Part shown: positions 8,394 through 47,755 of the stretch, piece after piece
Layout of the letters: every line of letters starts with the position of its first letter
How positions within the stretch are numbered: the first letter of the stretch is position 1
Assembly (NCBI GenBank): GCA_964247055.1
Contig: OZ176055.1
Span: 3,348,001-3,412,000, forward strand
DNA: 64,000 nt
Direction of reading: 5' to 3'
Origin: Paragordius varius
Lineage: Eukaryota > Animalia > Nematomorpha
Notes under the pieces: generated by a model
Told to the model about the DNA's origin: nothing
The model's input: only the letters and a program-made list of their open reading frames with translations
The model's database searches: none
Position numbers and translations under genes: made by a program

Positions 8394-11300
8394 ATGGCGG
8401 AAAAATATTCCTCACTTGGATGGTATTTTACCAAAGATGAGTTAAACGCTACCCCTAGTATCAAGGCTGGAATGAATTATGAAAAGGAATTAATGTATAG
8501 GCAACAGTGTGCAAATCTTATTCAAGACATGGGCCAAAAATTATCCGTGTAATACATTATTTTTTGTGTCTTTATTGAATTGCTATTATCTTTATATGCG
8601 AATATTTTAGGAATCAATTGTGTATAAGCACTGCCATTGTTTATATGCATCGATTTTATATGATTCATTCTTTCACGAATTTTTCTAGACACGTAATAGT
8701 CACTTTATAAAGTTTTAGAGCATAGCCGCATGTTCCATATTTTTGGCTGCTAAAGTGGAAGAACAATTCCGTAAAGTTGAACATGTCGTTAAAGTTTTAT
8801 ATGCGTGCCAATTCAAGGAAAAAGTACAGCCGATTGATGTACATAGCGATTTATATCAATCTCTTAGTTCTGAGTTGATATTCAATGAAAGCATTTTGCT
8901 TCAAACACTTGGTAAGTAATTTTTATATATTATCTCTAAAACATATTTGTAAGTTAAAACCAAAATAAACTACTCATAATAAGGGACATGTCCATAAACC
9001 CAAAATACCTTTATATTTTTTTTTCTAGTTTAGGTTTAATAAGCTATAAAATTGATAGCTTATAATTTTTACATCTAAACTTTTCTTGGATATGAGCCAT
9101 TCACTTCATTTTTTTCAGCCGGTTTATTCACACGGCTTGGCTTAATCTAATATTTTTAATAATTTATCCAGGATTTGATATAACAATCGATCATCCGCAC
9201 TCTCACGTCGTCAAATGTTGTCAACTCATCCGGGCTCCCAAAGATTTGGCTCAAGTCAGTTACATTATGGCAACGAATAGTTTACATCTTACGCTACATT
9301 GTCTACAGTATCGTCCTTCGGTCGTTGCGTGTATTTGCATTTATATAGCTTGTAAATGGTCCAATTGGGAGGTAGTTATTTATAAAACTTTTTATTTAGG
9401 GTATATGATGGTGTGTATTAAAGTTTTTTAGACAATAGTGTAAGTTCAAAGATAAGTTGCGTTTAAGGTTTTTTTTATATAGGCGGTTTCAAAGATATGT
9501 GGCGTAAAAATTTAATTCTCGTATTTTAAGGGTAGCGGTTTAACGAAAATTTTAAAGGGCACTTTGTAAATTTTAACGCAAGATGTTAAATGTTTTGACT
9601 ATTCTCTAGTAGTCAAAAAGTAAATTGATAAGTTTTGTACAGACAGTATTTATTACTCTTTTTTTCACACATTTGTGTTGATTAAATTCAGATCCCTCGT
9701 TCGACAGAGGGCAAAGAATGGTTCTGGTACATCGATAAAGATGTCACCCTTGATGTCATACAAGGTACGTTACATTACGTTACTACATTGCTATACTGCA
9801 TCGTATTACACAATAGCCTTTAGCCATTTTCACACACTACATACACACATTTATTTTCATATTTTTTTTATAAAATACTTGAAAAGTGTTGTAAATTAAT
9901 TATTTTTTAACCAAATAGGGTAAATTATTTTAGTGAAATAATTAAAGAATGTACATCTAGTGATATTTATATGATAGAAATTTAATTGTATATGGAAAAA
10001 AAGCATGAACATCAATTGAGCATTTAAACTGGTATTAATTCAGTAAAATTATATAAAAAATAAATTTTTTATCTCAATAATCGCACAAAATTTCTAATTA
10101 TTGAAGTTTTGGGCATTGGATTGGTCGAACAATCAAATGCAGCCGTTTATAGAGTAATAAGCAGTCTTCTTTAAAACAAATTAAAAAATTTTTGTAATAA
10201 TAAATAAAGCTTACCTTTAAAAATATTTGGTGTAGAATGCTTAAAATTTTATTTTTAAAATATATCATTATTTTTTTATTCACTTTGTATGTTTTTGACT
10301 GGTTGATTTGAAAGCGCTCACATGCATCATAGTCTAAAATGCCATTAATCCTAATATTTATATAATTATTTTTGATGACATATATTTAAATGTTTAATGT
10401 TTATAAATAAATTAGGCGCTATGGAAGAATTCATGAACATTTATGCTAAAAGCCCCCACAAGCTAAAAATGAAATTGTTCAAAAAGGTATGATTAATATA
10501 TTATACAGTTTTGAGTCTCTTTTTTAAATTTAATCCGGACATGTGAAAGCTTTAACGATTAATTAATATAACAAATTTGTATTTTATACTAATTACCCTT
10601 TTTACAACAATTTTAACATTTTATTTTATTTTAACCATTTTATAAAGTCTTGTATATTTTTTGTTTTTGATAATAATTAAAATTTATATAATTATGAACT
10701 ATTTAGTCGTCGTCCCCACCCCCTAGTATCTCAGGAAATCTTTCGGGGGGAAATGCAACAAACAACTCCACCATTGCTCAAAACGATGATACGGACAATA
10801 TTTTTGATAATAATGATGAGAAATCTGCGCTAACTTCTTTTGAAGATACTACATCAACTTCAGAGTTATTAAATGAAAAACCCAATTCCAAACATACAAC
10901 CAAAACGACAGAAAAGGCGGTTGTAAATGATGACACAAGTCCTGTTAAAAACACTAATAATAATGAAAATGAGAATGAGACACAACATTCTAACTCACTT
11001 TTATTTGGGAAATTGGATGAGTTTGAAAAAATTTTACATGGGTCTTCAACTACGTCGAAATCATCATATTTGGACAAAGACATTTGTACTACAAGTGCTG
11101 CTGCTGCTGCTTATCTCAAAATGAGTAAAGATGTGCTAGGGTACACTTCAAGCCCGATAAAACCTTTTTTGTCTCACAATCATAAAGAACAATCTGGAAA
11201 AACGATTGGTGAATCCGAAAGTATAAAAAACACTAATAGTAGTCCACCATTAAAAGGCGTGAAACGTCCACACCCTAACATTATAAATAATAATAATAAC

Positions 11301-14039: not shown

Positions 14040-16359
14040 TCAGGAATTAATGTTGACTTTTGAGATAATGGAATAACCTCTAAAGAAAAAATTAAAACAT
14101 ATAATAATAAAACATCATGCATTTTTAAACAAATTTCAAATAGAGCCATTTTAAATAATATCAAATGTATTTTAACATGTTAAGTTTACATGTTTTATTA
14201 AACCATTATAATTCACGGTTTAACATTTCGCTTAGAAAATTCAATATAAATATTTTTGTTTACATTACGCAAAAAACCCTTACTCAATATTTTTTGATAA
14301 TCGGTAATATTGTTCAACGTAATCGGCTTTGGACAACAAATTAATAAAATCTTCATCATGTGTTATGATTATGAGTTGAAAATTCCGTTGTGCACTTCTA
14401 TCATTTACAATCCTAAAAAACATGTTATAAAGAAAATTGTTTTATTAATACTTAATGACCTTTGAAAATTATCCCAAGGCCATTTAAAATCAAATTAGCA
14501 ATGAGCCAAATTTAAAAATGTGCTTTATTTATTCAGCCTTTTAGGCGCATGCTACCAAAAAATATTTTTTAATGTAAAATTGTAAAAAATACTCATCTCA
14601 AACTTTTGCGCCGCCATTTTTTTTCGCGAACACAACATGCAAATAGATGGATATTATGGTTATAAATAATTAATTTTAGAAAGCTTTTAATTCATTATTT
14701 ACAGGCCTATTTTTATATCTATATCAGCTGTTAGTTTTAATCGTATTACGATGATATCTGAATCTGGGATAGTTAAACTACTGTTCTAAGTTTTTTTAAT
14801 ACAGGAGCAGAGGGTTTGAAATCTAGATTTTAATTAAAACTACTTTAACTTTTTTCACAGATGCACAAAATTTTCAATAGTATAATATTAAGGACAACTC
14901 CAAGTCTAACCTCGTAAGTTCTGATAGGAACGAGATTAGTTTACCAATTATTATTGACGAGAGAATTCAACACATTTTAAAAATATATTTAGTTTTTCTT
15001 AAAATTCGTTTTTTATTATAATTTACCAAATTTCAGAAAAAACTTTAAACAATAATTATATAAATTTTTCAAATTAACAACATACTGAATAAGAGCGTAA
15101 GCCAGACTCTCAATATTTTCAGCATCAAGATTGGTGGTCGGTTCATCTAAAGCCAAAATGCCACAATTAAGACAAAACGTTTCGGCTAATGCTAAGCGTA
15201 TGATTAGAGAAGCTAAAACCTAATGTTACATATAATTGGAAAATCGTATTAAAATTTGATCATGTATAATACAGTAAAAATTAACGAAATGTAAAAACAT
15301 ATAAAGATAAACATATTTTTCAAAGGACCGTATTCTTTTAAATATAGCTTAATATTTTTAAATTGCAAAATATGGAATAATAATACAAAATGGTAATTAA
15401 ATCAATTAGATACATCTCAATTGTAATTAAATGGTTAATATAGAAATAATTTCTCAAAAATATAAAATGATGCCTTTTTCAGCCAACAGATTGAGATAGG
15501 TTACTTTATTATCGTTATATTCAGATTAAACAACAGTTTTCTTTTCAATCGCTCAAAAAACAATAACCGGCTTGAATGCTTTTAAAATGCAGTTATTAAC
15601 AGTAAAAGGTAATTAATTAAACTACAAATGCAAATTTAAGCAGTTGATATATGATGTTATTAAATTAACATTAAATAATAAAAAATTTAAATGCACAATT
15701 GAGAAAAAGCGTTTATTAATGCATTCATATTCGAGTTTATGATAGCTTATAAAAAATTTAGAACTTTCAAACATAGGATTATCAGTTTTTTTCTTGTTTG
15801 ATTATTCCATTTACATATTTTCAAAAAAAATTAATGTTTTATAATTCTCAAAAAATAATGTTTTTTTCGAATAAGATTTGTGAGATATTACCTTTTGACC
15901 AGCACTACATCGGCTACGCATATCAAGTTCAACATCATCCTTTACCATAACAACCCGATAATTATACACGGCCCGTTGGGGTCCACCTTACATTATTACA
16001 ATAAAATAAAATGACTTTATCATAAAAATTTGATATAATTTGTACATAATCACGATTTTATGAATAAAATAATAAATAATAGCGCTATATAATGGTTAAA
16101 AAATCTGTGATTTCAAAATGCATTGAATTTATATGGTATATTGGGTATGAAATTCGCATTTTAAAAAACCTCAAAAAAGGTAAAATCCATAGGATAAAGT
16201 GTAAATATAAGTTATGTAAAGTCAAACTTCTTAAAAAACTGCAATATAAAATGAAAATGGTACCATATTTAATAATCATTTTCAATCAAATAAAAGTGGA
16301 TTGTTAAATATGGAATTGTAAAACATTAGAATAATATATTTAACAACCCTACTCATATC

Positions 16360-16407
<48 letters not shown>

Positions 16408-19400
16408 ATATACACTAAAAACATCTTAAACAAGGTTTAAGCTTATTTTTAATGGTAATTATACAACTTACTTTTAACTAACTTAAACTTAGATATTTAC
16501 CAATTATCTTTTTCAAATTCACCATAAAATACCATAGAAAAAATAAAATATTTTTAACTTATAAATCTTTGTACACCAATTTACCTAAAGATGCATCTAA
16601 ATGTTGTATTGGGACTTCGTTTCCCTTCAATTTTTTGGCCATTGATTTTGCATTCGTAGTTCGGCCTCTTCCACGCCCACGTTTATTGCCAGTATTTATG
16701 CTCGATCGATTTGAAACTAAAATAAAAAATGAAATGCATATATATATCGTTAATTATTAATTAAGGGTTTTGTTTATCGAGAAAATGGGCGTTTACTAAA
16801 TTTTAACTTTCTTATATTTAGCAAATTTAATACATTTTCGGATACTTGTTTAATTAATAAATTTACGAAACATCCAAATATTTTACTTGTGAACAAAAAA
16901 AATTGATTAAATATTTATTGATTGTCAAAACTTAAAACCCAAATTTTAAAAACACAAATTTTAAAGCATAAAAACTTAATGCTAATTACTAGATTCCTCA
17001 TAATCAGAATCTGAAACATTATTATTATTAGAATTCATATTGAATGGGGTATTATTTGAAGGGGTGTTGTTCATGTTAAACAAAGTGTCATCTAAATCCG
17101 AACGAATTTCAATGTAATCAATATCATTGCCACGATACGTCGTTTTCCATAATTGACGGATAATTTTGTTTATCTCATTCATTTTAAGGGCATGAAAAGT
17201 CATTATTGCTCTAAAATTATTTATAAAATTATAATTCAAATGGACTACTCCATAATGTCAATTGTGGGAAATATATAGCTTATATAATGATGCTTTTATA
17301 AAAATAATTGATTAAATTTAAACTCAAAAACTACCTTATATGAAATCCGAAAATATAATATTTTGTGAATTTAAATTAATTTTATAAGCGTTGTTTATTC
17401 AGTTTTACAAAAACATTATAAAAGAAAAAGGACAAAAAATACTAAACATTCAACGATAGTACCTGTCAAAAGCTTTGTGATAAATGGTGAGATCTTTTAA
17501 CGCTAATTGCGTAGTTCGATACTTTATTAAAGCTGATTTATACCGCTCCTTGCTATACTTGTACGTTTCATTTTGATTAAGTGTGTTCTAAAGTAAATAC
17601 ACAATTTACACTTCAAATTGACCTTGAACAATTCAAATTGACCCTAAAATATTATGTGTTTTTTGTAAATACCTGTATTTTTATATATTTTTTAAAAAAT
17701 TAAATTTAGTTTAAAATTAAAATTATACTGAAAAATAAATAAACTAAGCCATATAAATATAATACATATTAATAATGAGTTATATTAGCTCAAAAACCCA
17801 TCATTTATTTTTAGTGAATTGTGTTTAAGAGTGAATTTGAATTGTAAATGGTATATAGGCAAATGTATTAAGGGTATAAATATTTATAATGCATCTTTGA
17901 TGAACAAAAAATTAAAATAAAACCTTACATTTAAAACATCACCATAGGCAAATTATTAACAAAATTTATTTAACATGATATATTTGAAATCCAAAAACCA
18001 TGCATAAACAAATGATCAATAGTATAAATATAATTTTAAAAATACCTTTAATTTTGAATAAAATCATAAAACACCTTTATTAATAAATTTTCATTGGATA
18101 AAAAAAATCACTTTTAATCTCGCTATTTCACGGGCTAATTCGCTTTGCATTCCAGCCAATTGATGCGATTCTTGGATTAATTTATCCTTTTTGACTTTCA
18201 TTTCAGATATTTGTCTATGTTTGATTTTGAATTATAAATATAATATGATGATAAAAAAGATTGTGACCTATACTGAAAATTATAAATAATTTTAAAAACA
18301 AATTTTTTTTATAAATAAACCACATTTCTTTGGTTCTTGATTCGTTCTTAGCTAAACTATAATATAAAATTCTGGTTTAAATAATGGTAGCTATTTAAAT
18401 CACTATCCTCATTCTGCCACCCTAAATGATGGTTTAGGACAAAAAATTAGAATATAATAATTTTAGTTTATCCTATAAAAAATATCTTTCATTTACTTTT
18501 TTTGAATTGTCATTAAAATTTAAGTATTTACGGTATTTCGCAAAATTGATTAAATATTAATACCTTGTTATTTCTGAAACATTTAAGGCTTTATATTCGT
18601 CCTCGTATTCCTGCATATTTTCAATTTTTAGGATCATCTCTTTTTTCCAAGCCAACACCTGCAAAATTTCTTTGAGTGTTCGATTAAGGTTCTAATATAT
18701 AATTTTTAAAACAAACTTACAGATAATTAAATTGTAATTTATTAAAAATATGCGTTCAGCAATAATCGAACTATTTAAACGTCAATTTTTTTGGTTATAA
18801 GTTAAATAATAAAACAAAATATGAAAAACATTCCAATTTAATTAATAAATACATATATGTAATAAATTTTTAAAAAATAGGTTTTAAATTTAATTTATTA
18901 AAAATTTCATAAACACATATAAAACAAAGACATACCACATCTTTTAAATATCCAAATATAATGTTATTCTAAAACTTTTAATGTTTTAGAAATAATTTCG
19001 CTAATATCCAGTCAAGATTTCAGATAAAATATATTATAACATAGTGAGACCTCAGCATTAGATATTTGATCCTTAATAGAATCCATTTGCATTTGAATTT
19101 GTGTCCTTTGGTTTTTTATAGTTTCATCTTGATCTTCGAGACCTTTTAATTCAATTTCCAAATCAAGCAGGGCTTGCTGACCCTTGTGAATTGTGGTTGA
19201 ATGGCAGGGGTGTCTATAAAGTATTGATTGCTTAAATATATTGATTGATTTATAATTAACATTTTTTGCAGTTAATATGGAGATACACATTGAATTGTCA
19301 TAGGGTATTTAATTGTCGATAATAGGAAGCTTTTACTAAGAAGAATTAATAAATATTTAAACCGATTATACAAGTTCCAAATTTTTAAATTTAGTTTTTG

Positions 19401-19666
19401 GATTTGATATAATTACATAGCAGTTGAATTATTAGTTAGTAAATACCTAAAATACTATTTAATATAAAACTTTACACCTTTTGTTGTAAAAATAAGCTGA
19501 CATATAATTGATAAATAATAACTTTTCAATATTATCCATCATTAAGGTCAATTGTTTAGCATTTGATTCGGTCGATTCCACTTTTTCCCAAAGTTCTCGC
19601 CTATTTTCTTCCAATTCTTCATTTAAAAGAAGCAACTCGTTTTCTAAATCACTTATTTTATCCTGT

Positions 19667-19741
<75 letters not shown>

Positions 19742-22700
19742 GAAAAGATATGTATAAAATTATTAAATTCTAATAATTAATATTTTAATAACCCAAAGCG
19801 CTAATTAAAATATAACAATAAATATAAGCAGTTAATCATTATATTATAAAATAAAATATTTTAATGTTGAAAAACCAGTGTAATGTTTTTTAAATAAATT
19901 TTGTAAAACGGTAAAATTTTATAGTTGATTCCTACTGAATTTAGCATAGGAGGCTAAGACTCATTCCTTAATTATAATAAAGTTAAAATTTCTTAAAATC
20001 TTATCAAAAATTATAAACTAAACAACAAATTAGTTGAAAATATGGATAGGGTGCTTCAATTTAATATACCAAAAAAGAAAGAAAAAAACTCAGAAAATAA
20101 CCTGTAATGGCTTAATTTTTGGTGTTAATTCACCAATCATTCTTTCATGTTCGCCCTTTTGTTTAGTTAGCTCTTTCCGTTTTTCCTCCAATTGTACCAT
20201 ATTTTGGGATTCCCTTATATAGAATAGGGGGATGTATTTTAAAATAAACTACACACGGATATACCATTCATTTTTGGTGAAAAAACACTTTTACAAATGA
20301 AAAAAAAACCATTTTTTATTATAATATACTTATTATTTTCAATCAAAACACAAAATCTTTTCATCCTAAAACGCCGCTATGCAAGCATTGATTTTACAAA
20401 ACTATATAAATTTTTTCCTATAATATAGTTTTTTTATAAAAAAATTTGTCTTTAAATTTATCATAAATATATATAGTACCCTTGTAACTTTAATTTATCG
20501 GCTTGGAGCGTGTTTAATTGTTGACCCAAAGTGTGAAGTCTATCTTTGTGATTTATAAGTTTCTGTTTTTGAAAATCAATTTCCTTATTCAAACTTTCTA
20601 ATCTAAGATCCAATTCCTCCTTTTCCTCCAATAGCACGTTTAAACCTTTCCCCTCTAAAGAATATATATATTAATTTTTTTAAATCCGAAAAAAAAATTT
20701 CAAAATTGGTTTTAAACAATTTTATTTAAAATATACGGTTTAAATTTATACAATTTAAACAATTTGTTTTTTTTTAAAAAATAAAAATATATTTAAACGC
20801 AAATAAAAGTTTTGTTACATTTATGGCAAAACTAACCGTAACAAAAGGTAAACAATATCTAGATTATATAAAATAATTATGCAAAGATTAAAATTGAAAA
20901 ATTTTAGGTTGTTTTGCAATCCAGATATTACAAAAAACAAACCCTTATAGTGTGATCTTAATAAAAAATAATATTTAGAATTGTCATAAATTGGTATTCG
21001 GTATTAAATTAAATATTAAAGGATTTAAAGTTTTTAGTTCCTTGCCTCATGTTAAATATTGGGAAAATTGGAAAAATTAAACTATTATTCAATTAATACT
21101 TTATTAAAAAGGTACCATGACAATGGATAATCAAAATTAATTTTTACATTTTAACAAAAAAAATTTAAGGAAAACGAAATATCTTAAAATGATTTAAATA
21201 TACATTTTTTTACAAAGCCGTAAAAAATTAAATTAAGATTTAATTTAAAAATTAATTTTTTATATCTAGAAATTAAATAAACACGAAACAAACAAGCTTA
21301 CCGTAATGGTGTGAGGTTATTTTTGATTTTTCCTCCTCAATTTTACGCGTTAATTCGCTACATTCTCCAATCAATTTATCATGTAAAATGGCATCTTTAA
21401 CCAGCGATTTCAATTGGTTTTCAGCCTCTAACAATGATGTTTGATGTTTTTGTTCCTTTGATAAATGCGTTAAAATATTAAGAGTTATTGGCACAAATTA
21501 ATAAAAAAATTATAAAAATAATTTAACTTTTTTTTAGAAATAATACTTTTAAATTGTTGCGTGAAATTTAAGTTAAAAAGTTAACCGATGATTTACGAAT
21601 AACTGAATAGTAAATATTGAAATACAGAAAAAACGGAAAAATATAAAGACAAAATTTTTTTCTAAAGACAGCAACCATACTTTTCAAACCTTTATTCTAT
21701 TTATGTCATTCAATAACAATCGTAAAATATGTAATTTATGGTGTTACCAATATACATCTCTATTTAATATTTTAAAGTTTAAGTTATATATTTAAAGAAA
21801 TCAAGATTTAAAAAGTAGAGTTGTCTATAGAAAAAAATATTTGTCTTTATCTTATTACGTTTTGTCCGTATAATTTAAATTTTTATCTGCAAAATAAGAA
21901 AACCTCTGCTATTTTATATTTCGTGTCTGCCAGATTTTCATTGATGTTTTCAAGGGTCTTTTCCATGTCTGGTATTTCTTTTTGTTTAATCTTTTCTATC
22001 TAAGGCACAAAAATAGTTGATTAATATATTTTTGGGTTAAAATCTACATTTAGATAGCGAATTTATATAAAATTTACAAAAAAATAATCAAATATTTAAT
22101 ATGAACCGCATTCGATTTGGGTTTGTAACACATTAGTTTATCGTATTGAGGTGTAAGGCTTTCAATTTCTTTATCTAACTGTTGAATTTTGGCAGGGATA
22201 AGGCCTAATTTATGCTTCAAATCTTCTTTGAGCTTTGCTACATAATATAATAATAATAGTATTAACATTAGGATTAAATATAAAATTATGAAAATAGGTA
22301 CCGTTTTCGTTCCTACATATTTATTTTATAAAAATTTGGTACAAATTAATTTCCAGTTGCAAAAAAAATATTTATTTACAAAAAATTTTGGGTTTTCCGC
22401 TTAGCTTGATGATCTGGAACCGATTAAATATTTTGATATGCGAATTAGACAAAATATGTAAAACAGATAAATTCTTTGAAAAATTAAAATTAACACTTTT
22501 TATTTAAAATAAAATAAAAAAATTATATCTATATCATTTACAATTTAAATTCACCCTTAAACAATTCAAATTCACCCTTGAACAATTTAAATTCATCCTT
22601 AAATAAAATATATGTTTTTTAAGATTATGAAAAAATAATAAACTATGCCATAAATATATATTAAATTAATAATGAGTTATATTGGTTTAAAAACACATAA

Positions 22701-25700
22701 TTTATTTTTAGGGTGAATTTGAATTGTTCAAGGGTTTTGAATTGTTCGAGGGTAAATTTGTGTAAATAGTATATATATAGAACATTTTGACAATAAAATT
22801 GGCCTAGAATTTAGTAACACAAAATAACCAGTTCATTACAAATATTATTATTATTTACAATAATTGAAGTTTTCAGCAGCCTTGGTGGTTGAAGTGGAAA
22901 AATTGCGATCACAAACAGGACAACAATGTTTTTGTTCCACGCGTTCCAAAAATTTCTCATAGATAGTTTGACTACCAGCTAAAGCACCACGACGTCTACA
23001 CATTTAAAGTTTTTTGTTATGTAAAAAATGTTTTTTTACCATATTATTAAAAGAAAAAAAAAACCGATTCTTTTTCGTAAAATTTGACTTACTCATATAA
23101 TTCTTGTAGTTTTGTTTCCACATCTCTAATCTGAGAGCTCATTTCTTCCGTATTGTTAAACTATATAATAAGCAAAATAAAATATTTTAAATAATATATA
23201 TATATATACCATTTATAGTTTTAATTCATCCTTTCACTATTCAAATTTACCCTCGAACAAATCAAATTCACCCTTGAACAATTCAAATTCCCCTCTAAAA
23301 ATAAATTATGTGTTTTCCAACTAATATAATTCATTATTGATATAAAATATATCTTTATGACATATTTATTATATTTTCAGTATTTTATTTTAATATAAAA
23401 ATTTTATTTTTTAAAAATAATAAATATAGGTAAATTTTTATCTAAAAAAAACATATAATTTATTTGAGGATGAATTTGAATTGTTCAAGGGTAAATTGAA
23501 TTGTTCGAGGGTGAACTGAATTGTAAATGGTATATTTGTATATAAAACCTCATTTTGGCTATTAGCGATCTCTAGAAGTTCCTTTTTCAGTTCCTTAATT
23601 TTTGTTCGTAAATGCAATTTCTCACTTTCTAAGCCATAACTTTTTTGTTTCAATTCGGTAATGATATCCGTCGTTTTTTGTGTAATTTTAGTTGCACGGC
23701 TATGTAAGCAAAATAATAATGGAAATTTTTTTTTAAAATTTTAATAACCTATTAAAGTTATATCAAATAATTATTAAATATGAATAGGCATTAAACAATA
23801 TTTCGATATTCCATTTATGGTTAAAAATAATCAAAAATGTGAAAATATTATGACAACTTATATTTTAAAAACTAAATAAAATCATATACAATATCCGATT
23901 TATTTTAACAAAAGTTATATATGTTTTAAAGATTGTAACCAATATATCGTTAAATAATCTGAAAAAACCGCCAATTAATTATGTTTAAAGTTTCAGGTTT
24001 AAATAGCGTCATCAATTTATATAATTTCCATAAAACAAACTAAGACATCTTACAATTTTAATTTAAATTCCATACATAATACTTTGCAAGGAGAGTATTG
24101 TCCATTTAATTGCATATATATGTACTCCAATTTTAACAACATAAAAAAGCAAATTTTTTTTACAAATTATATACCTTCCAAGTTTGTCCAACACATCATG
24201 GGCTTGACCTGCATCAATTTTCGATTCCTCAAAACCGATTTCATTTTCATCATCATTTTTGTGTTTGTGAATCAAATTTTTTAGCGTTTCTGCACGCATC
24301 CTTATACGTTGGGGAAGGGTTAGGCATGTTATGGCATTTTGTTTTTCCGTTAAATCTGATTGAAACATACGTATCCTATTATCAATCTCAGCAGCGCCAT
24401 GTAAAACAGCAATTTGTGCATTTAATTTGGATGCCTGCACGTCTAAACGTGATTTTTGGCCCATGGATGCCGCTATTTCTCGTTTAAGTCTAAATAAATA
24501 GTGAAAAATCAATCAAAATCTTTTTTTAAAGGATAAAATATACCATTTACACCTCAAATTCACGCTCGTATAATTCGAATTCACCCTTAAATAATTCAAA
24601 TTTACCCTCTAAAATTTACCCTGGAACAATCGAATTCACAATCTATATTTTTTGGTATTTATAGAAATATGAATTGTATAAAATGATACTAAAAAAGAGA
24701 ATAAACTATGCCATTAAAGATATATAAATGATATTAAAGATGAGTCATAATAGCCGGAAAACACATCATTTAGTTTTAGATTTGGATAAGGGTGTATTTG
24801 AATTATAAATGTATATTTGTAAGTTTTTGATAAAAATATAAACTGGGTGTAAATGAGTTTCGCCTATTTTTTGTTTTAATCTAAATTTTGAGCACGAAAA
24901 AATACGCTTTTATATATATAAATTATTTCATTTATATTAGTTCTTGACGAATAAAGCTTTTTATATATTCCATAGATGCAGATTTTTAACGTTTTAGTCA
25001 AAATAAATTTGGAGCATAAAAAAATAAATTGCTTTTTTAAGGGAAAACAATATTCATTAAAATTAGATTTTTAACCGGTCAAAAAATAAAAACTTGGATA
25101 TTTACACGGGTTTTTTGCCCCAAAGATCTGCTATTTCACGTTTTAATCGAATTAATTTTGAACATAATTTAATCGCTTTTTAAAGGATATATGATTTGAG
25201 TTTTTGACCAATAATTATAAAACTGGCCTGACCTCTTATGAATGCAATCATCATAATAACCATAAATATAATATATATATTGTTACTAAACTAAACATAA
25301 ATAAGTTAAATAGTTTGTTTCATTAATAATCTATATATTTACAAAAATGGAAAATGCTGGCTTTGTGGTCTGTTTCCACCGGTAAACCCATTCAAATCGA
25401 AAATATCGAAAAAATATAATCATTAATAAATGTCCCGACAATAGCTTCGCCCTTTTTTTGAAATAGGCCCCCAGTTCGGACCCTAAGTAAGAACGGTTTT
25501 TCAAAACAGAAGTCCACAAAAATCGTGTCTTTGAGACAATTTTCCGGAGAACGTGTTAAACCATTCAATTTCAAATATGATTTTTGTTTACTTATTTTCA
25601 ATTGCGCCGAACATAGTCGGCTCGCTTTTTTAATTTAGGCGCTCTTTTTACCCGCTCCCTCCGTAAAATGCCATTTTTTTTAAAAAAACAAAGTCCACAA

Positions 25701-32187: not shown

Positions 32188-32255
32188 AAGAAAATTTGAA
32201 TTTTGTACGACCGAACTAAATAGCGGTAATTGCCTGTTTTAATCGCTTGTTCGAA
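32188..32255. promoter_or_regulatory. 68-bp bidirectional promoter/5'UTR region between RAD50 and EXOC8
   Basis: RAD50 ATG at 32187 (-) and EXOC8 ATG at 32256 (+). Both N-termini match the conserved protein starts. Confidence 0.8.
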
Positions 32256-34868
32256 ATGAATTTAGAAGCACGTCTTATTCGTGTTCTTGCGAATCCCGAT
32301 TGCGATGTCGAAGCTTTATCGAAACAAATTTATCAAACTGGGGATCAAGATGATATCATTGAAGCCAAAAGTAAAGTCAATGATTTTCACGACGATATTG
32401 CACAACAAATGAAGAAAAATGTATATAAAAATAATTCTATATTCATTGATACGGCCAGGGATATCTCCTATCTAGAGAGTGAAATGTTTATCTTAAATCA
32501 AAAAATAAATGAACAAAAAGCGTTAATAAACATGTTGCAATCCTTAGTATTGGCTGGAAATAAAAATCTAGCCAACGAAAATAACGAAGACGCTAATAAA
32601 TCTAGCGTATTCTTTTCTGACATTTCGCACGAAATCGAGAATGACGGCATTTTGAATCAGTATTGTGAGGAAATAATCGTTCATCAAGGAAATTTATATC
32701 AAATGGATGAAAATGATCTTGGAATATTTAATGTTGTACGTAAATGCCATTGCTTTTTACTTGAATCCACCTTTTTAATTTGTTCCATAAAAGAGGATGT
32801 GGATGACACATTCAAATCAAACGATATCTATCGTCAACGAAGATTGGAGCCAAAATTGAAAATAAAATCGTATAAATACAGATTGTTGTTTAATTTACTC
32901 TTACAATCTTTGGCCGTTATAAATGTTAAAGAACCTAAACATTCCCTATCATCCCCAAAATACTTGATTAAATTACTTGTATTCCCAGAAAACATAATTT
33001 TGAAGTGTAATTCGGAGGAAAATAAAAATATATGGTTAACAGCAATCGATGAAACTAAACGAGGAGTTCGAAAACCTATTGTTCCACAATCTAGACCGGT
33101 TAAGAAACAGCTCACGAATGAAAAATTGTTGGACAAAAACCTATCAAACAAAGCTGAAATCCAAAATGAACCATTAATTTTACCGGATTGGATAAATGAT
33201 TTTACGGATGAAATCGATTTGTTGGTTGCACAAAAGCAATATGATCGAGCTGTCATACACTTGGATGAGGTTAAGGGATGGATCAAAGATTTCCGTAGTT
33301 CCCAATCATTCAATAATAGTGTCAAAAATGATTCAGATAACTCGTCCAAGATGCTAGATGAATTAATTATTCGATGCAATGATACGCATCGCATGTTAGT
33401 ACAATCCATCTGCGATGAAATTATGAGCTTCGAAGGTTCCGCCGAATTCGAACAAGTTTATATGGCGGTACCGCAATCACTTTCAACAACAACTGATCCA
33501 TGGAAATCAACAGTGAAATTAAATGATACTATCACAAATTTATCAGATAGCAGTGATGAGGGGAAAAAGAGTACGGCACATCATGCAACATATCATGTAA
33601 ACTTTAGTTATGAAACAATCATGTACCAAAATATGCGCCCCATAAACATAACACTTTTACGAGCCCTCGCCTCGTTGGGTCAGCCTGAGTTAGCTCTTAA
33701 CCTATATTTGAATTACCATGTCTCAGCTTACTTGATTGGTAAGCAAATTGCTTCATTGACATACGGCAAATCTGGGGAGGGTGATACATTGGCTTACGTT
33801 AGGAGGTGTGGTACAATATTTTGGGGTTGCATTGCTCAAACAGCTTGGTTTTTGAGGTATGGTACGCATGAAAAGACAGGTTTTTTGCAAGGAATCCCAG
33901 ATGTTAATCAAATGGAAAATGAGGGAGAAAATATGTTAGCTCCTACATTTGATCAAACCAAAAAAGAAGCTTTAGCCTTTTTTCTTATATGGCTCATTAA
34001 GTATGAGATTAAACGATTCACCGGCCATATAGTCAAATTGATTAAGTGTGTGTTGCATAAATTTATTGAATTTTCACAACACATGGCTATTCTTAGGGAT
34101 CAGTGTAGAATGTTATCTAAACCACAATACAAATTGGATATCGATGTGCTTTATGCCTTAGATATGTGCTTTAATCCATGGATCAAAAAGTCTTTGGATG
34201 AACACGTGGAAATCATTTGTGAACTAAGTAGAGAAAAGGTGTATGAGGATAGGTTTGATATGCCCTTTTCTCAGTTGTCCGATAAAAACGCAGTTCAACA
34301 ATATATTTCGAATGTGCAAAATATGTTGAGCAAATCAACTCTTGCCAACAATACATTTGATTGGAATTTAAATTCCCTTATTGTAGCAGAAGAAAAAGCT
34401 AAGCTCGATACCGAAACTGCTTGCAATTTTCTCGTATATATAGCTCCTAGTACATTATCGTTTGCTCAACATTTTATTGAGTTGGTCATAAGTATGGGCC
34501 TCATTTATACCAATGATCGACATAAACTTTTCAAGGATGCCATTATACATACATTTCTTAATCACATACAGTATCTAACTATGATTCCACGAGCTACGCG
34601 TTATAAAAATTCTCCGACTGCCATGCTCTCGATAAAAATGAATATTCAATATCTATTGAATTATTTGGTTAAATGGTTAAACCTGCATTGGTCCACACAT
34701 ATTTCATCCCAAGCAAACGATGATTTTAAAACTTTGTCAAACATAACCTTAGATGACATATTGCAAATCAATCAAAGCGACATGAAAATTGAGAAGGCCG
34801 GACTTACTAATAAGCCAAAACAAGATGAAGATGTACAAGCAGCTAAAAGCAATATCAATTTTATTTAA
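32256..34868 (+). CDS. EXOC8: Exocyst complex component 8 (Exo84), single exon, 870 aa
   Basis: MKKNVYKNNSIFIDTARDISYLESEMFIL matches the Exo84 N-terminal coiled coil (KRNVYxNYxxFIETAREISYLESEM). It is followed by a PH-like region and PDWINDFTDEIDLLVAQKQYDRAV (cf. PEWIQELPEDLDVCIAQRDFEGAV). The first ATG is at 32256; the ORF track starts at an upstream TTG. Confidence 0.93.
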   Translation: MNLEARLIRVLANPDCDVEALSKQIYQTGDQDDIIEAKSKVNDFHDDIAQQMKKNVYKNNSIFIDTARDISYLESEMFILNQKINEQKALINMLQSLVLAGNKNLANENNEDANKSSVFFSDISHEIENDGILNQYCEEIIVHQGNLYQMDENDLGIFNVVRKCHCFLLESTFLICSIKEDVDDTFKSNDIYRQRRLEPKLKIKSYKYRLLFNLLLQSLAVINVKEPKHSLSSPKYLIKLLVFPENIILKCNSEENKNIWLTAIDETKRGVRKPIVPQSRPVKKQLTNEKLLDKNLSNKAEIQNEPLILPDWINDFTDEIDLLVAQKQYDRAVIHLDEVKGWIKDFRSSQSFNNSVKNDSDNSSKMLDELIIRCNDTHRMLVQSICDEIMSFEGSAEFEQVYMAVPQSLSTTTDPWKSTVKLNDTITNLSDSSDEGKKSTAHHATYHVNFSYETIMYQNMRPINITLLRALASLGQPELALNLYLNYHVSAYLIGKQIASLTYGKSGEGDTLAYVRRCGTIFWGCIAQTAWFLRYGTHEKTGFLQGIPDVNQMENEGENMLAPTFDQTKKEALAFFLIWLIKYEIKRFTGHIVKLIKCVLHKFIEFSQHMAILRDQCRMLSKPQYKLDIDVLYALDMCFNPWIKKSLDEHVEIICELSREKVYEDRFDMPFSQLSDKNAVQQYISNVQNMLSKSTLANNTFDWNLNSLIVAEEKAKLDTETACNFLVYIAPSTLSFAQHFIELVISMGLIYTNDRHKLFKDAIIHTFLNHIQYLTMIPRATRYKNSPTAMLSIKMNIQYLLNYLVKWLNLHWSTHISSQANDDFKTLSNITLDDILQINQSDMKIEKAGLTNKPKQDEDVQAAKSNINFI

Positions 34869-38539: not shown

Positions 38540-38574
<35 letters not shown>

Positions 38575-42609: not shown

Positions 42610-42660
42610 CAGTGTTCTCAACTTAGAGGCGTGAAAAATATATTTTGCGCCTCGCCTCCA
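42610..42660 (+). mobile_element. Possible hAT/Charlie-type left terminus (right end not found)
   Basis: CAGTGTTCTCAAC resembles Charlie-group TIRs and is followed by GC-rich GAGGCG/GCGCCTC motifs. Confidence 0.3.
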
Positions 42661-44660: not shown

Positions 44661-44734
44661 AGTTGTTAAAAAAATAAATATATTAATAATATTTCTAATA
44701 TCATCGGTATACGTATAGCATAAATATATGAATT

Positions 44735-45464
44735 TTATTTATAATTGTTAAATATGGGTTCTAATGCTTCATTTAATATATCAAGTATAAGGGAAGATTT
44801 TTCACTGGTGTCGTCATTTTGTTTAATTAATTTATGGTCAACGATAGGTTCGAAAACAATAGATCCCCCTCCATCATCAGGGATTTCTGTTGTGTTGCTT
44901 TTATCATCATTTTCAGAAGTTTTGGACGAAGCATCAGAAGTAAGAGGAATAAGGTTGCGTAAATTACGTACAATAAAATTCTGTTGTTCGCTATGATATT
45001 GTCCCAGAGTTCGTTCAAGTTCACGAATTTTGAAATTTTGCTTCTCCACCAGGAATCCCAACTCATGGATTTGAGCACCAATCGATTTAAACTTGTAGGC
45101 AAGTTCATCGTCTTTTGCTGCTTGACTTTTGGCAGAACGAAAGTATTCTAAAGTTAAAGTCCCAGCCGCAATTAAAAAAATTAACGCTTCACCCAAAAGA
45201 TCGGCCCCTAAATCAATGGCCATTGCTTCATTAAGTTTCTCCACACGATTAGGAGTACCCAATCCAAGAACGTGCATTTTGGTTACGGTTTCGATCTTGT
45301 GATAAACTAAAAAATATTAAAGAAAATGTACTTTGAGCAGGTGGTATGACTATATAAGTACGAAAGAATGGACTTGTTTTTGCCTTTTCCCGTAAAACCC
45401 TAACTAGTGGTTTGCTTAATTGTTTTACCGCAAGGTATCCAAGTTTCACAAGTGGAAAAACCAT
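44735..45464 (-). CDS. OPA3: OPA3 mitochondrial outer-membrane lipid metabolism regulator, 2 exons, 234 aa
   Basis: Exons 45464-45332 and 45306-44735 give MVFPLVKLGYLAVKQLSKPLV...SPFFRTYIVIPPAQ|IYHKIE...KLNEAMAIDLGADLLGEALIF, the OPA3 family motif. Confidence 0.92.
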
Positions 45465-45608
45465 ATAACTTTAATAAGAACCATAAAATTGTTATACAAT
45501 TTTTGGCTATAGAGTATTTTTACATCATCTGTGTGATTACAATGAAGAGTGTTTAAGGCATGTGTTTTTTTTCAAAAATCAATGTGCTGAAAAATATTTA
45601 AATTTGCC
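45465..45608. promoter_or_regulatory. 144-bp bidirectional promoter/5'UTR region between OPA3 and the zinc-finger gene
   Basis: OPA3 ATG at 45464 (-) and predicted ZF ATG at 45609 (+). Confidence 0.6.
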
Positions 45609-47755
45609 ATGGATCTTGAAAATCAAAGGAGAAAAAGTTTATTATATTAATAAACGTTAGGCGAAAGAAGTTTTAAACCTTCAGCTGCTGTTCAACAGCT
45701 TATAAATGATTTGTATATATCAAATGACGCCAAGAATACTTTGACCACAGTGTATATTTCAAATTTAACTCGGCAATCGAATGAAAACATGGGCAACAAT
45801 CCTACAGCTATGAGAAATGACAATATTTTTTCTTCGTTAGAAAGTTTTTTTAGATTTAATTTAAAAACAGTAACGAACGGGACACTCACCGAAAATATTT
45901 TGTGTCCATATTGTGACTTTTCATCTGAATCTAAATCCTCTATGTATTCTCATATTTCAAGCAGACATAATAATAAACTTGAAAAATTTGATGATAAAAT
46001 TCGTATTTACTTTGTTTTAATAGCTCTAGCTTTTAAGGATTACATGATATTAGAAAATAATAAATTCAAATGTTTAGCCAAAAATTGTGGTTATGAAACC
46101 AATTATAAAACTACGTTTTGTGTACATTTTAAACGTTCCCACAGATATACAAGTATTTTCAAATTTAACTTTAGATAGCGATCGCCCAATTTCAGAAAAG
46201 TATGATATTCCAGCAAAAAATAGAATTAAAATAGATAAAACTGTTGCCGCTAATAATATTTTACCAGGAAATTTCAAAGCAAATCCGAAAGTATCTGTTA
46301 AGAAAGAACCACGCGTAAAATATGTTTCTAGGCGACGTGAAACCGTTTATCCGCTTGCTACATTTCCTGATCGAAATTCCAATTATTATCAAGCCTTTAG
46401 CTATTTTAATGGTGGTTCCCATGGTAACGGAGAACCAGACAGCCATTTTTTTCAAGATATTTCAAACATTTCCTACCATAAAAATGATAGTATTTATCAT
46501 AATTGTGATTCACCATCAAACTTTTTTTCAACACATACTGGTTTTGATTTTAGTTTAAGCGCCCTGCCAGAATCTGAGAAAAAACCGATCATACATAAAT
46601 GGGAAAAGGAAAATGGTTTGTATATGAGGATTATTTAATTTTAAACTGTGTTTTTGAATTTTAAAACTTTCCTATAAATAAAATTGTTTTTATATTTTTG
46701 GCTTCTTAAATTGGTTAGATTTCGTAAAAGATTTATTATTTTTATTTAATATTGTTTTTGATTTTTATATATAGTATATTAATTATATAGCAATATAGTA
46801 TTTACTGTAAAAGTTATTTTTATATATTTATAATAGGTGGTAACCTGGCCCTACCCAAAAATCCGAGAATAAGATATGGAGGTTATATATTCATTTTTTT
46901 ATTTTTACGAATTAGAATATGTTTTTATATTTTAAAAAGTTAAATTATACAATAAAGTTATAAAATATTCTGTGTTATTAGTTGTAATAATCAATCCACA
47001 TTTAAGTTAATTTCTTAAACATAATCCTTTGTATGAAATTATTGAAAAAATCCCAATTATAACTATTTAAAAAATGGGATTTTAAGGCGATTATTAAAAA
47101 CAAATTTGTTTAACTTAAGATCGGTATTGGTTCATTAATTTTTTGTTCAAGCTCTGTTTTCATATAAACTCCGGTCAATTCTGGATAAAAGCTATTTATA
47201 TATCATTATAATAATACTAAAATTAGAAGAAAGTGTCAGTTTGCTCATTCAATAATGAAAACTTTCTATTTTGTCTATTAATTCATATATCATGCTCATT
47301 AATTATTAATAATTTCTTGATAACTATATAAATATATGCTACTTATGAAAAATATCCTTAAAGAGCATTGATTTGGAAGTTTCTAATGATATAGTTATCA
47401 AGGATCGGATTCGGAGATTTCGCACCACGAAGTAATTCATATTCATAATATTTATACTTCGTGGTAATCTGAAATGATTTTATTTTACGTAACACATGCC
47501 CTTGTGTACAACTAATGATTTTACAGATCATTAGAAACTGGCCTTTGCCGATAGCGCATTTTCATTCTTTAGCCTACACCACGGGGAGGTTATAGGGCTG
47601 ATTTTATTATTTAAATTTATCTTAATGCTTAGAATATTAACTATATTGAAAATTATCGTAAGCATGTCATTTAATTTCTTGTTATTAGTCGTCAATTTAC
47701 TTTTACGGGTCATAAAAATCGTGTTTCGAACCGCGATTTGTGGGCAGCAGTTTAA
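45609..47755 (+). CDS. C2H2 zinc-finger protein of unknown family (387 aa model; 327 aa if it ends at 46638)
   Basis: Exons 45609-45636, 45661-46152, 46175-46615, then phase-compatible small exons 46837-46881, 47403-47431, 47527-47588, 47689-47755. Fingers CPYCDFSSESKSSMYSHISSRH and CLAKNCGYETNYKTTFCVHFKRSH. The distal exons rest on splice-phase fit only. Confidence 0.55.

What the first reader, a model, noticed from the sequence alone, without database searches (positions are those of the whole stretch)
8693..46174. Seven 22-28-nt spliceosomal micro-introns, all among the first introns of genes whose later introns are long
Seen: GT-AG introns of 26 nt (cyclin T intron 2), 24/28/24 nt (RAD50 introns 1-3), 25 nt (OPA3 intron 1) and 24/22 nt (ZF introns 1-2). 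All end in TAG and have no clear branch or polypyrimidine module. Downstream introns of RAD50, cyclin T and trx that I resolved are about 60 bp to 2 kb, and many hold MITEs. Known: most animal spliceosomes have a lower limit well above 25 nt; introns this short are reported mainly in ciliates, nucleomorphs and dicyemid-type parasites, where essentially all introns are tiny. Inference: this animal has a bimodal, position-dependent intron system, with micro-introns confined to promoter-proximal regions. That implies either a spliceosome that handles both classes or strong local selection against insertions near the TSS.
Basis: partly seen in the sequence, partly recalled or inferred. Interest (0 to 1): 0.88.

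Follow-up and report, generated by a model that had tools for sequence, protein, structure and literature searches.

The report
Tiny introns at gene starts
Four ordinary genes of this AT-rich, repeat-rich worm genome (closest known relative: a horsehair worm) carry introns of only 22-28 bases, all within the first ~520 coding bases. In RAD50 these sit exactly where other animals have introns of 0.7-4.7 kb, while the same gene's later introns stay normal-sized.

Summary
All seven GT-AG segments exist at the stated sizes: 26 nt; 24, 28 and 24 nt; 25 nt; 24 and 22 nt.

- **Shown by homology (five):** removing RAD50 i1-3, OPA3 i1 and cyclin T i2 gives gap-free matches to family profiles or solved chains.
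- **Ancient positions (four):** these lie at the same codon and phase as introns of 0.7-12.9 kb in an annelid and in spiders.
- **Weaker (two):** ZF i2 rests on reading-frame logic. ZF i1 is only probable.

Three independent DNA data sets hold the OPA3 and ZF segments, so those three are not assembly indels. One haplotype has a 22-nt OPA3 intron. No RNA could be laid, so splicing itself is not shown here.

The 5' polarity holds in this window. RAD50 has 24/28/24 nt at the 5' end and then about 25 introns of 97-3,489 nt. Its C-terminal introns, also orthologous to annelid ones, are 252-673 nt. The polarity is not absolute: cyclin T i1 is 62 nt and GPCR i1 about 550 nt.

Sub-30-nt animal introns are published for dicyemids and myxobolids, and short introns at ordinal positions 1-2 for Gyrodactylus. 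The scan has already noted both this class and this polarity elsewhere in this genome.

The parts
8693..8718 (+). cyclin T intron 2, 26 nt, phase 0, GTAATA...TTTTAG
   Evidence: Exons 2 and 3 abut on cyclin T1/T2 PDB chains. Coordinates.
8549..8610 (+). cyclin T intron 1, 62 nt. A first intron that is short but not micro.
   Evidence: Sequence read. Coordinates.
32035..32058 (-). RAD50 intron 1, 24 nt, phase 0 after GPNGTGKT; carries in-frame TAA and TAG
   Evidence: TIGR00606 42|43. 8-codon gap with stops in tblastn. Same codon and phase as the 713-nt Owenia intron.
31920..31947 (-). RAD50 intron 2, 28 nt, phase 0 after VHDPK
   Evidence: TIGR00606 70|72. Same position as the 1,614-nt Owenia intron.
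31615..31638 (-). RAD50 intron 3, 24 nt, phase 2 inside the Trp codon of ESxWPL
   Evidence: TIGR00606 161|164. tblastn gap. Same codon and phase in Owenia (4,697 nt) and in the spider Parasteatoda (about 1,175 nt).
31212..31508 (-). RAD50 intron 4, 297 nt: the first long intron, at CDS position 603
   Evidence: Exon chain model. Spider has an intron at the same site.
14283..32187 (-). RAD50 gene, about 29 exons. Introns 4-28 are 97 to about 3,489 nt. The C-terminal introns orthologous to Owenia's are 252, 672 and 673 nt.
32256..34868 (+). EXOC8/Exo84, a single 870-codon exon, head-to-head with RAD50 (68 nt between the two ATGs)
   Evidence: Pfam VPS51_Exo84_N and Exo84_C. Coordinates.
45307..45331 (-). 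OPA3 intron 1, 25 nt, phase 1 after PPAQ. A 22-nt allele exists in run X5.
   Evidence: PF07047 38|40. Same codon and phase as the roughly 12.9-kb intron of Stegodyphus OPA3. Deletions at 45316 and 45318 in one X5 contig.
44738..45464 (-). OPA3 coding region (two exons, 233 aa)
   Evidence: All 6 listed SNPs are synonymous, in both exons.
45637..45660 (+). ZF intron 1 (probable), 24 nt, phase 1, after a 28-nt first coding exon
   Evidence: Reading-frame logic only. Present unchanged in DNA runs X1 and X5.
46153..46174 (+). ZF intron 2, 22 nt, phase 1; joins open frames of 174 and 186 codons
   Evidence: Identical in X1 and X3 contigs.
23195..23544 (.). MITE with long terminal inverted repeats inside RAD50 intron 12. 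The intron was about 60 nt before the insertion.
   Evidence: Self-BLAST and sequence.

Best explanation
These are genuine U2-type GT-AG spliceosomal introns that have shrunk to near the physical minimum (22-28 nt) in this lineage. At least four of them descend from ancient introns that are 0.7-13 kb in other animals.

**Signals (shown in the sequence).**
- A reduced 5' site, GTA or GTT, with no G at +5.
- A branch-like YTRAY element whose A lies 7-12 nt before the 3' end.
- A run of 3-6 T followed by AG.

**Inferred mechanism.** Recognition is by intron definition across the whole segment, with only 12-20 nt between the 5' site and the branch.

**Placement.** In this window they occur only in the first ~520 nt of the coding sequence. 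Downstream introns of the same genes fall into a 'short' class of about 60-110 nt or are enlarged by transposons. Miniaturisation has therefore acted, or been tolerated, only near the 5' end.

**Why (inferred, not shown).** The cause is probably a combination of two things. First, splicing of such weak, tiny introns may work efficiently only close to the cap or promoter. Second, selection may keep the very compact promoter-proximal block free of insertions; the RAD50-EXOC8 and OPA3-ZF start codons are only 68 and 144 nt apart.
For: - **Exon continuity after removal:**
- **Same codon and phase as introns in Owenia, Parasteatoda and Stegodyphus:**
- **GT-AG at all seven.** The chance of GT...AG at one fixed pair of boundaries is 0.0024.
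- **Real DNA in independent samples:** the OPA3 and ZF segments are present in X1, X5 and X3, with no joints across them.
- **Length variation:** the OPA3 intron has a 3-nt shorter allele that keeps the CTTAAT motif.
- **Purifying selection on both OPA3 exons:** 6 of 6 listed SNPs are synonymous.
- **Signals above background:** YTRAY with the A at -7 to -12 in 5 of 7, versus 16% of 122 background look-alikes (P=0.002). TTTAG ends in 5 of 7 versus 28% (P=0.02).
- **Polarity:** RAD50 sizes are 24/28/24, then 297, then 97-3,489 nt. Orthologous C-terminal introns are 252-673 nt. Owenia shows the opposite trend, with its longest introns first. For homology-anchored introns, Fisher P=0.0028.
Against: - No RNA evidence for any of the seven. 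RNA-labelled run X6 laid nothing, and the RNA-labelled runs X6-X10 held none of the sampled words.
- ZF evolves fast (7 of 10 listed SNPs are non-synonymous) and has no homologue to anchor its junctions. ZF i1 could instead lie behind a short upstream ORF.
- The sample is four genes in one window.
- In-frame, stop-free micro-introns hidden inside poorly conserved downstream exons cannot be excluded without RNA.
- Polarity is not absolute: cyclin T i1 is 62 nt, and GPCR i1 is about 550 nt at about +250.
- The cap- or promoter-proximal mechanism is pure inference.
Confidence: 0.78

Rival explanations
1. The micro-introns are real, but the 5' polarity is a sampling or ascertainment effect. They are easiest to see in conserved N-terminal domains and short genes, and genome-wide they occur anywhere along genes.
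For: Only four genes were sampled, and OPA3 and ZF are short genes in which every intron is 'early'. Other first-reader notes on this genome speak of micro-introns 'throughout' genes, and of a Tc1 transposase with four of them. Stop-free, in-frame micro-introns in the RAD50 coiled coil would escape my models.
Against: The conserved RAD50 C-terminal ATPase lobe and hook region align without gaps. Their introns, orthologous to Owenia's, are 97-673 nt, so conservation-based ascertainment would have found micro-introns there. The chance that RAD50's three fall on ordinal positions 1-3 of 28 is 1/3276. Four other independent notes in the scan report the same polarity (not checked by me).
Confidence: 0.17
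2. Polarity comes only from a gradient in insertion tolerance. All introns were once micro, and transposons later inflated every intron except those next to promoters, where insertions are selected against.
For: Several long introns hold repeats. In RAD50 i12, 350 of 388 nt are one MITE, and i14, i16 and i23 are 40-65% repeat by self-BLAST alone. The start codons of the two gene pairs are only 68 and 144 nt apart.
Against: Downstream introns without detectable repeats are 97, 107 and 113 nt. Removing the MITE from i12 leaves about 60 nt, not 22-28 nt. GPCR intron 1, at about +250 nt, does hold a 375-nt repeat. Repeat detection within one window is weak: only 9% of the window was flagged.
Confidence: 0.12
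3. The segments are not spliceosomal introns. They are assembly indels, lesions in decaying genes, DNA segments excised in somatic cells (like ciliate IESs), or sites of translational bypass.
For: No RNA shows the cut. ZF shows no purifying selection.
Against: All seven are GT-AG, and four lie at ancient intron positions with the same phase. Three DNA data sets hold the OPA3 and ZF segments at full depth with no joint across them. OPA3 is under purifying selection on both sides of its intron. RAD50 is otherwise intact over about 1,300 codons.
Confidence: 0.03

Closest known systems
Ultra-short introns of myxobolid myxozoans and Dicyema japonicum (Hadjez et al. 2026, PMC13644364; read)
   Same: GT-AG introns of 20-30 nt in an animal. 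They lie at conserved positions between conserved exons. The 5' site is reduced to 'GTa'. Weakly conserved A residues lie a few bases before the AG. Short introns cluster next to other short introns. All are parasitic lineages.
   Different: In those animals the median intron is 22-27 nt and the genomes are compact. Here most introns are 60 nt to several kb, the genome is rich in repeats, and the tiny class lies only near gene starts. The 3' end here keeps a T-run (TTTAG). That paper surveyed 51 metazoans and does not mention Nematomorpha.
Bimodal intron lengths of neodermatan flatworms, especially Gyrodactylus salaris (Hahn et al. 2014, PMC4040987; read)
   Same: There are two discrete short modes. 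The shorter mode dominates ordinal positions 1 and 2 and the longer one positions 3 and above, alongside many introns over 100 bp.
   Different: The modes there are about 32 and 58 bp (about 36 bp in tapeworms, from memory). Here they are 22-28 nt and about 60-110 nt. [quoted passage not shown]
Tiny introns of ciliates and chlorarachniophyte nucleomorphs (Paramecium about 25 nt, Stentor 15-16 nt, nucleomorph 18-21 nt; partly from memory, Stentor as cited in PMC13644364)
   Same: Size range, extreme AT-richness, and a 5' site-to-branch distance far below the roughly 40 nt thought necessary in yeast and mammals.
   Different: Those are protists in which essentially all introns are tiny. No positional rule is known for them.
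General eukaryotic rule that the first intron is the longest (abstract of PMC6424223, listed)
   Same: Intron length depends on ordinal position.
   Different: The direction is opposite. Owenia RAD50 follows the usual rule (713, 1614, 731, 4697, then mostly 200-700 nt). This genome inverts it.

Membership tests
U2-type GT-AG spliceosomal intron | GT at the 5' end and AG at the 3' end | tested here: met
   7 of 7. Chance per fixed boundary pair is 0.0024.
U2-type GT-AG spliceosomal intron | Removal restores an uninterrupted reading frame that is colinear with homologues | tested here: met
   Five of seven by profile or PDB-chain continuity. The two ZF segments are supported by reading frame only.
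U2-type GT-AG spliceosomal intron | Position and phase shared with introns of orthologous genes | tested here: met
   RAD50 i1-i3 match Owenia, i3 also matches Parasteatoda, and OPA3 i1 matches Stegodyphus. Cyclin T i2 and the ZF introns were not tested.
U2-type GT-AG spliceosomal intron | Absent from mature mRNA; lariat formed at a branch adenosine | not testable with these tools
   RNA-labelled run X6 laid nothing, and the RNA-labelled runs X6-X10 held none of the sampled words. A branch-like YTRAY motif is enriched, but that is a sequence signal only.
Genome-wide ultra-short-intron architecture (dicyemid / myxobolid type) | Median intron length under 30 nt in a compact genome | tested here: not met
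   In this window 7 introns are 22-28 nt and about 35 are 62-3,489 nt. The sequence is rich in repeats.
Neodermatan-type bimodal, position-biased short introns | Two discrete short modes, with the shorter one enriched at ordinal positions 1-2 | tested here: met
   Sizes are 22-28 nt versus 62 nt and more. Micro-introns sit at ordinal positions 1-3 only. The sample is small, and the mode sizes differ from the published 32/58 bp.
Internal eliminated sequences (DNA-level excision) | TA-bounded segments that are missing from somatic DNA | tested here: not met
   The boundaries are GT...AG. Three DNA runs hold the OPA3 and ZF segments with no joints across them.

The most novel reading that the evidence does not exclude
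This animal may run two splicing regimes in one nucleus. The first would be a cap- or promoter-proximal mode that removes sub-30-nt introns with only 12-20 nt between 5' site and branch, and that works only within roughly the first 0.5 kb of a transcript. The second would be an ordinary mode for introns of 60 nt and more further downstream. Intron size would then be set by distance from the transcription start. If so, micro-introns moved downstream would fail to splice. Many of the 'lost' universal genes reported for Nematomorpha would then be annotation failures at such introns.
Probability: 0.2. Interest if true: 0.85.

Novelty: new variant of a known kind. Interest (0 to 1): 0.62.

Why it matters
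**A third animal lineage.** Introns under 30 nt were long thought absent from animals and are published only for dicyemids and myxobolid myxozoans, both with compact genomes. Finding them in an ecdysozoan related to horsehair worms shows that genome compaction is not required. They stand beside kilobase introns filled with transposons, and they are orthologous to kilobase introns elsewhere.

**A natural experiment.** The inverted length polarity within single genes allows a test of what limits minimal intron size, and of whether splicing efficiency depends on distance from the cap.

**A practical consequence.** Gene finders that impose a minimum intron length will truncate or break such genes. 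The deposited Gordionus OPA3 model (161 aa) starts at an internal Met and lacks the whole first exon. BUSCO completeness of about 72% for Gordionus, and the claim in the title of Cunha et al. 2023 of rampant loss of universal genes in Nematomorpha (cited), should be re-examined with micro-introns allowed.

Tried and rejected
- **RNA.** Both sequencing-run searches listed the RNA-labelled runs X6-X10 with a 0.00 share. The single read-laying run laid nothing from X6. X1, X5 and X3 turned out to be DNA.
- **Hairworm DNA.** The look-up of encoding contigs found no record for the window's EXOC8, nor for the Gordionus EXOC8 and OPA3 proteins. Intron sizes in the nearest relative could therefore not be read.
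- **RAD50 exon 3 search.** A word-index search gave only 3 fragments and no relative.
- **RAD50 coiled-coil exons.** Mapping them to TIGR00606 failed because they are too divergent. Their boundaries come from a simple splice-site score and are approximate.
- **A false lead.** The top hit P0009 looked like a truncated hairworm model but is a clam protein. I dropped it.
- **Other RAD50 loci.** Tachypleus RAD50 is intronless. The gene for P0012 was too long to fetch. The Parasteatoda locus lacks the first 127 codons.
- **Rfam.** No match in the window.
- **Repeats.** Self-BLAST flags only 9% of the window, so the transposon content of long introns is underestimated.
- **Permissive scan.** A scan for ORF-bridging GT...AG segments gave many chance hits in MITE and junk frames. 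Only the seven, plus an unconvincing 30-nt candidate at 61932-61961, look like the class.
- **Rejected alternative splice choices.** The 20-nt (8699-8718) and 33-nt versions of cyclin T i2 would add or drop residues relative to cyclin T1. Alternatives to ZF i2 at 46120-46144, 46120-46153 and 46135-46153 would delete the His residues of the second zinc finger.
- **Literature.** Searches on Nematomorpha or hairworm introns found no report of short introns.
Full report
**What the window is.** The window has 22-37% GC. Genes were identified with Pfam and NCBIfam.

| Gene | Strand | Coordinates |
|---|---|---|
| Rhodopsin-type GPCR | - | 133-3773 |
| Cyclin T | + | from about 8394 |
| RAD50 | - | 32187 down to 14283 |
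| EXOC8/Exo84 (one 870-codon exon) | + | 32256-34868 |
| ADAMTS-like gene | + | about 36-42.5 kb |
| OPA3 | - | 45464-44738 |
| C2H2 zinc-finger gene 'ZF' | + | 45609-46638 |
| Trithorax-type SET/PHD gene | + | 48.1-57.5 kb |
| ETS gene | + | from 61.9 kb |

The long ORF at 32247-34868 is EXOC8, not RAD50. RAD50 lies on the other strand, and its ATG is 68 nt from the EXOC8 ATG.

The closest proteins in the large database are from Gordionus sp. m RMFG-2023, the Montseny horsehair worm. EXOC8 is 30% identical (E=1.6e-69) and OPA3 is 61% identical (E=1.7e-51). Each is far ahead of the next hit. The animal is therefore very probably a nematomorph or close ally, but not that species. Its GC and repeat load resemble the published Gordionus genome, which has 26.9% GC and 63.8% repeats. 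That paper never mentions introns.

**The seven segments exist as described.** Exact coordinates and lengths are.

| Intron | Coordinates | Strand | Length |
|---|---|---|---|
| cyclin T i2 | 8693-8718 | + | 26 |
| RAD50 i1 | 32035-32058 | - | 24 |
| RAD50 i2 | 31920-31947 | - | 28 |
| RAD50 i3 | 31615-31638 | - | 24 |
| OPA3 i1 | 45307-45331 | - | 25 |
| ZF i1 | 45637-45660 | + | 24 |
| ZF i2 | 46153-46174 | + | 22 |

All begin GTA or GTT and end TAG, with 8-23% GC. Every one either shifts the frame (22, 25, 26 and 28 nt) or carries an in-frame stop (the three 24-nt ones). Retention would therefore truncate each protein.

**Five are required by homology.**
- The four N-terminal RAD50 exons hit the full-length RAD50 model TIGR00606 at positions 2-42, 43-70, 72-161 and 164-198. 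They are contiguous across all three micro-introns.
- tblastn with full-length RAD50 from a horseshoe crab and from a vertebrate-like RAD50 representative (P0012, source not looked up) shows gaps of exactly eight codons, containing stops, at i1 and i3. It shows a frame change at i2.
- OPA3 exon 1 covers PF07047 positions 1-38 and exon 2 covers positions 40-121. The split codon is position 39.
- Cyclin T exon 2 ends at the residue aligned to position 81 of cyclin T1 chain 3tnh_B, and exon 3 starts at position 82. This rules out the alternative 20-nt and 33-nt splice choices listed.

**Four sit at ancient intron positions.** I fetched annotated loci for orthologues and mapped their exons exactly.
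- **RAD50 i1 and i2.** In the annelid Owenia fusiformis, RAD50 has introns after ...GPNGTGKT (phase 0, 713 nt) and after ...FVHDPK (phase 0, 1,614 nt). These are the same codons and phases as i1 and i2 here.
- **RAD50 i3.** Owenia also has an intron inside the Trp codon of ESNW|PL (TG|G, phase 2, 4,697 nt), as here. The spider Parasteatoda has the same Trp-codon intron, about 1,175 nt.
- **OPA3 i1.** The spider Stegodyphus has an OPA3 intron in phase 1 directly after PPAQ, about 12.9 kb, exactly where the 25-nt intron lies here. From memory, human OPA3 intron 1 (the c.143-1 site) is also there.

These are therefore old introns shrunk by 30- to 500-fold, not new insertions or artefacts.

**The two ZF segments are weaker.** ZF has no detectable homologue beyond its C2H2 fingers.
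- **ZF i2.** It joins two open frames of 174 and 186 codons. The chance of 174 open codons in this base composition is 2.5e-7. Among the four frame-correcting GT...AG choices in the 98-nt overlap, it is the only one that keeps the His residues of the second finger and looks like the class. I rate it about 0.85.
- **ZF i1.** It follows a 28-nt first coding exon. Support is that 45 codons stay open upstream of the first internal Met (P=0.02), that this stretch has no in-frame ATG, and that a GCCATGG start lies just upstream. Without splicing, that ATG opens only a 13-codon ORF. I rate it about 0.65.

- **RNA.** Run X6, labelled RNA, laid nothing. No transcript evidence exists for these seven.
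- **DNA.** Runs X1, X5 and X3 (a differently labelled organism) are DNA. They cover the intergenic sequence and show no joints at the micro-introns.
- **Contig coverage.** X1 and X5 contigs span ZF i1. X1 and X3 contigs span ZF i2 without any difference. X5 contigs cover OPA3 i1. For these three introns the 'assembly indel' rival and any DNA-excision idea are excluded.
- **Length polymorphism.** One X5 haplotype lacks 45316 and 45318-19, giving a 22-nt OPA3 intron (GTACATTTTCTTAATTTTTTAG). It still carries the CTTAAT motif and the T-run. Length thus varies within the class range.
- **Selection.** All six listed SNPs in OPA3 are synonymous third positions: one in exon 1 and five in exon 2. In ZF, three are synonymous and seven are not. 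OPA3 is under purifying selection in the proposed frame on both sides of its intron. ZF evolves fast, so this test cannot support its model.
- **Not checked.** RAD50 and cyclin T were not checked against reads.

**Splice signals.** I compared the seven with all 122 other GTW...TAG segments of 22-28 nt and at most 25% GC on both strands of the window.

| Feature | Seven micro-introns | Background | P |
|---|---|---|---|
| Any YTRAY (mostly TTAAT, TTGAT, TTAAC) | 6 of 7 | 33% | 0.006 |
| YTRAY with its A 7-12 nt before the 3' end | 5 of 7 | 16% | 0.002 |
| TTTAG end | 5 of 7 | 28% | 0.02 |

None of the seven has G at +5. The numbers are small. They point to an ordinary U2-type branch and a nematode-like short U-run plus AG, with only 12-20 nt between 5' site and branch. 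This resembles the reduced 'GTa' 5' site and the A-stretch before the AG described for myxobolids and Dicyema. Unlike those, the T-run is kept here.

**Polarity.**
- **Where the micro-introns lie.** They lie at CDS positions 129, 216 and 497 (RAD50), 237 (cyclin T), 133 (OPA3), and 28 and 520 (ZF).
- **RAD50 downstream.** RAD50 then has about 25 further introns. From an exon chain built on open frames, splice scores and tblastn anchors, they measure 297, about 909, 429, about 491, 234, 113, about 3,489, 475, 388, 97, 621, 107, 448, 647, 266, 439, 309, about 349, 349, 524, 252, 273, 598, 672 and 673 nt. Sizes in the coiled coil are approximate, but every pair of exons there is separated by far more than 35 nt.
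- **The decisive control.** This control uses orthologous introns in the conserved parts (this genome / Owenia). N-terminal: 24/713, 28/1614 and 24/4697. Hook region: 97/485, 621/578, 107/553 and 448/1119. C-terminal, with phases checked: 252/641, 672/439 and 673/715.
- **What the control shows.** Only the 5' introns are miniaturised. Neither intron age nor ease of recognition explains this. Owenia's own series follows the usual rule of longest introns first (PMC6424223 abstract).
- **Cyclin T.** Its introns run 62, 26, about 260, about 320, and then about 1 kb.
- **Statistics.** Among homology-anchored introns, 5 of 8 within the first 520 nt of CDS are micro, against 0 of 13 beyond (Fisher P=0.0028). 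The chance that RAD50's three occupy ordinal positions 1-3 of 28 is 1/3276.
- **Limits.** The evidence comes from four genes, and RAD50's three introns are not independent. OPA3 and ZF have no later introns. Cyclin T i1 (62 nt) and GPCR i1 (about 550 nt, mostly a 375-nt repeat, at about +250) show that early introns need not be micro. The 5' ends of the trx, ADAMTS-like and ETS genes could not be defined.

**Why the polarity?** This was not resolved.
- **Pure insertion model.** This model holds that all introns were once tiny and transposons later inflated those away from promoters. It is only partly supported. Some long introns are mostly repeat: RAD50 i12 has 350 of 388 nt in one MITE with long inverted ends. 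But removing that MITE leaves about 60 nt, and repeat-free downstream introns are 97-113 nt.
- **Three tiers.** There seem to be three tiers: micro (22-28 nt), short (about 60-110 nt) and transposon-enlarged.
- **Preferred reading (inferred).** The weak, tiny introns may be spliced efficiently only near the cap or promoter, so deletion bias can drive them to the minimum there. Further downstream a 60-nt floor would hold.
- **Compact start regions.** The extreme compaction around the two start-codon pairs (68 and 144 nt apart) fits selection for a tight 5' block. It does not prove it.

**What is known.**
- Hadjez et al. 2026 (PMC13644364) surveyed 51 metazoans. They found introns under 30 bp only in myxobolid myxozoans and Dicyema japonicum, and predicted further lineages. 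Nematomorpha are not mentioned.
- Hahn et al. 2014 (PMC4040987) found intron modes of about 32 and about 58 bp in Gyrodactylus salaris. The short mode dominates ordinal positions 1-2. This is a clear precedent for position-biased short introns in another parasitic phylum.
- My literature searches found no report of such introns in hairworms.

**Earlier notes of this scan.** The scan itself has noted the micro-intron class many times on other DNA of this genome. One follow-up claims RNA confirmation at other genes. At least four first-reader notes describe the same 5' polarity. I did not check those notes.

**Consequence for annotation.** The deposited Gordionus OPA3 model is 161 aa and begins MSKMHLLGLG.... 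That is an internal Met of exon 2, so the model lacks the conserved 45-residue first exon that the spider and this genome have. This is what a gene finder would produce if it could not model a tiny intron there. I could not fetch the Gordionus DNA to verify it.

**Verdict.** Polarity is real in this window and well controlled in RAD50, but it is not absolute, not shown genome-wide, and its cause is open. It is a new variant of known kinds, not a new category.

Noticed in passing
window 32188-32255 and 45465-45608: Two head-to-head gene pairs have start codons that are very close together. RAD50 and EXOC8 ATGs are 68 nt apart, and OPA3 and ZF ATGs are 144 nt apart. Six of the seven micro-introns belong to genes of these pairs. 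EXOC8 itself is a single 870-codon exon.
   Followed up: partly
protein P0006 (Gordionus sp. m RMFG-2023 OPA3 model): The deposited 161-aa model starts at an internal Met (MSKMHLLGLG...) and lacks the conserved first exon. This is consistent with an unmodelled tiny 5' intron in that published annotation. The DNA could not be fetched.
   Followed up: partly
window 23195-23544 (also 3058-3432, 22525-22779, 17595-17857, 24533-24618, 59396-59554): A MITE family with long terminal inverted repeats that read as '[13 protein letters not shown]' in open frames. One copy fills RAD50 intron 12, flanked by TA/TATA. Copies or fragments lie in several other introns.
   Followed up: partly
window 47326-47633 and 44400-44707: Word depth in the DNA runs jumps from about 350 to 13,000-95,000, and to 1,000-2,600. 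These are very high-copy and moderate-copy repeats in the intergenic DNA beside ZF and OPA3.
   Followed up: no
window 44400-49000: The best-matching DNA run, X1, is heterozygous at many sites (about half depth). The alternative alleles equal those fixed in X5, a different sample with the same species label. About 1 SNP per 100 nt is listed, so diversity is high or the label covers cryptic lineages. X3 carries a different organism label yet is equally close.
   Followed up: no
window 46003-46023 (+): An in-frame, stop-free GT...AG segment of 21 nt (GTATTTACTTTGTTTTAATAG) lies inside ZF exon 2 between the two fingers. It could be a further micro-intron or coding sequence, and only RNA can tell.
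   Followed up: no
window 25105-25179 (-) versus 24450-24512 (-): A short open frame inside the 3.5-kb RAD50 intron reads ...[13 protein letters not shown]. This resembles the start of the next exon (...[13 protein letters not shown]). It is a possible exon-edge duplicate of the kind another note of this scan describes for SPT16.
   Followed up: no
window 56830-56915 (+): The SET domain of the trithorax-like gene has a 28-residue, stop-free insert (SLNYHHNFS...TTLSS) where relatives have about 10 residues. It is either a real loop insertion or an unrecognised in-frame intron without clear GT...AG ends.
   Followed up: no
locus L001 (Tachypleus tridentatus RAD50): The horseshoe-crab RAD50 gene returned as the closest full-length homologue is a single 3,948-nt exon, so it looks like a retrocopy.
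   Followed up: no
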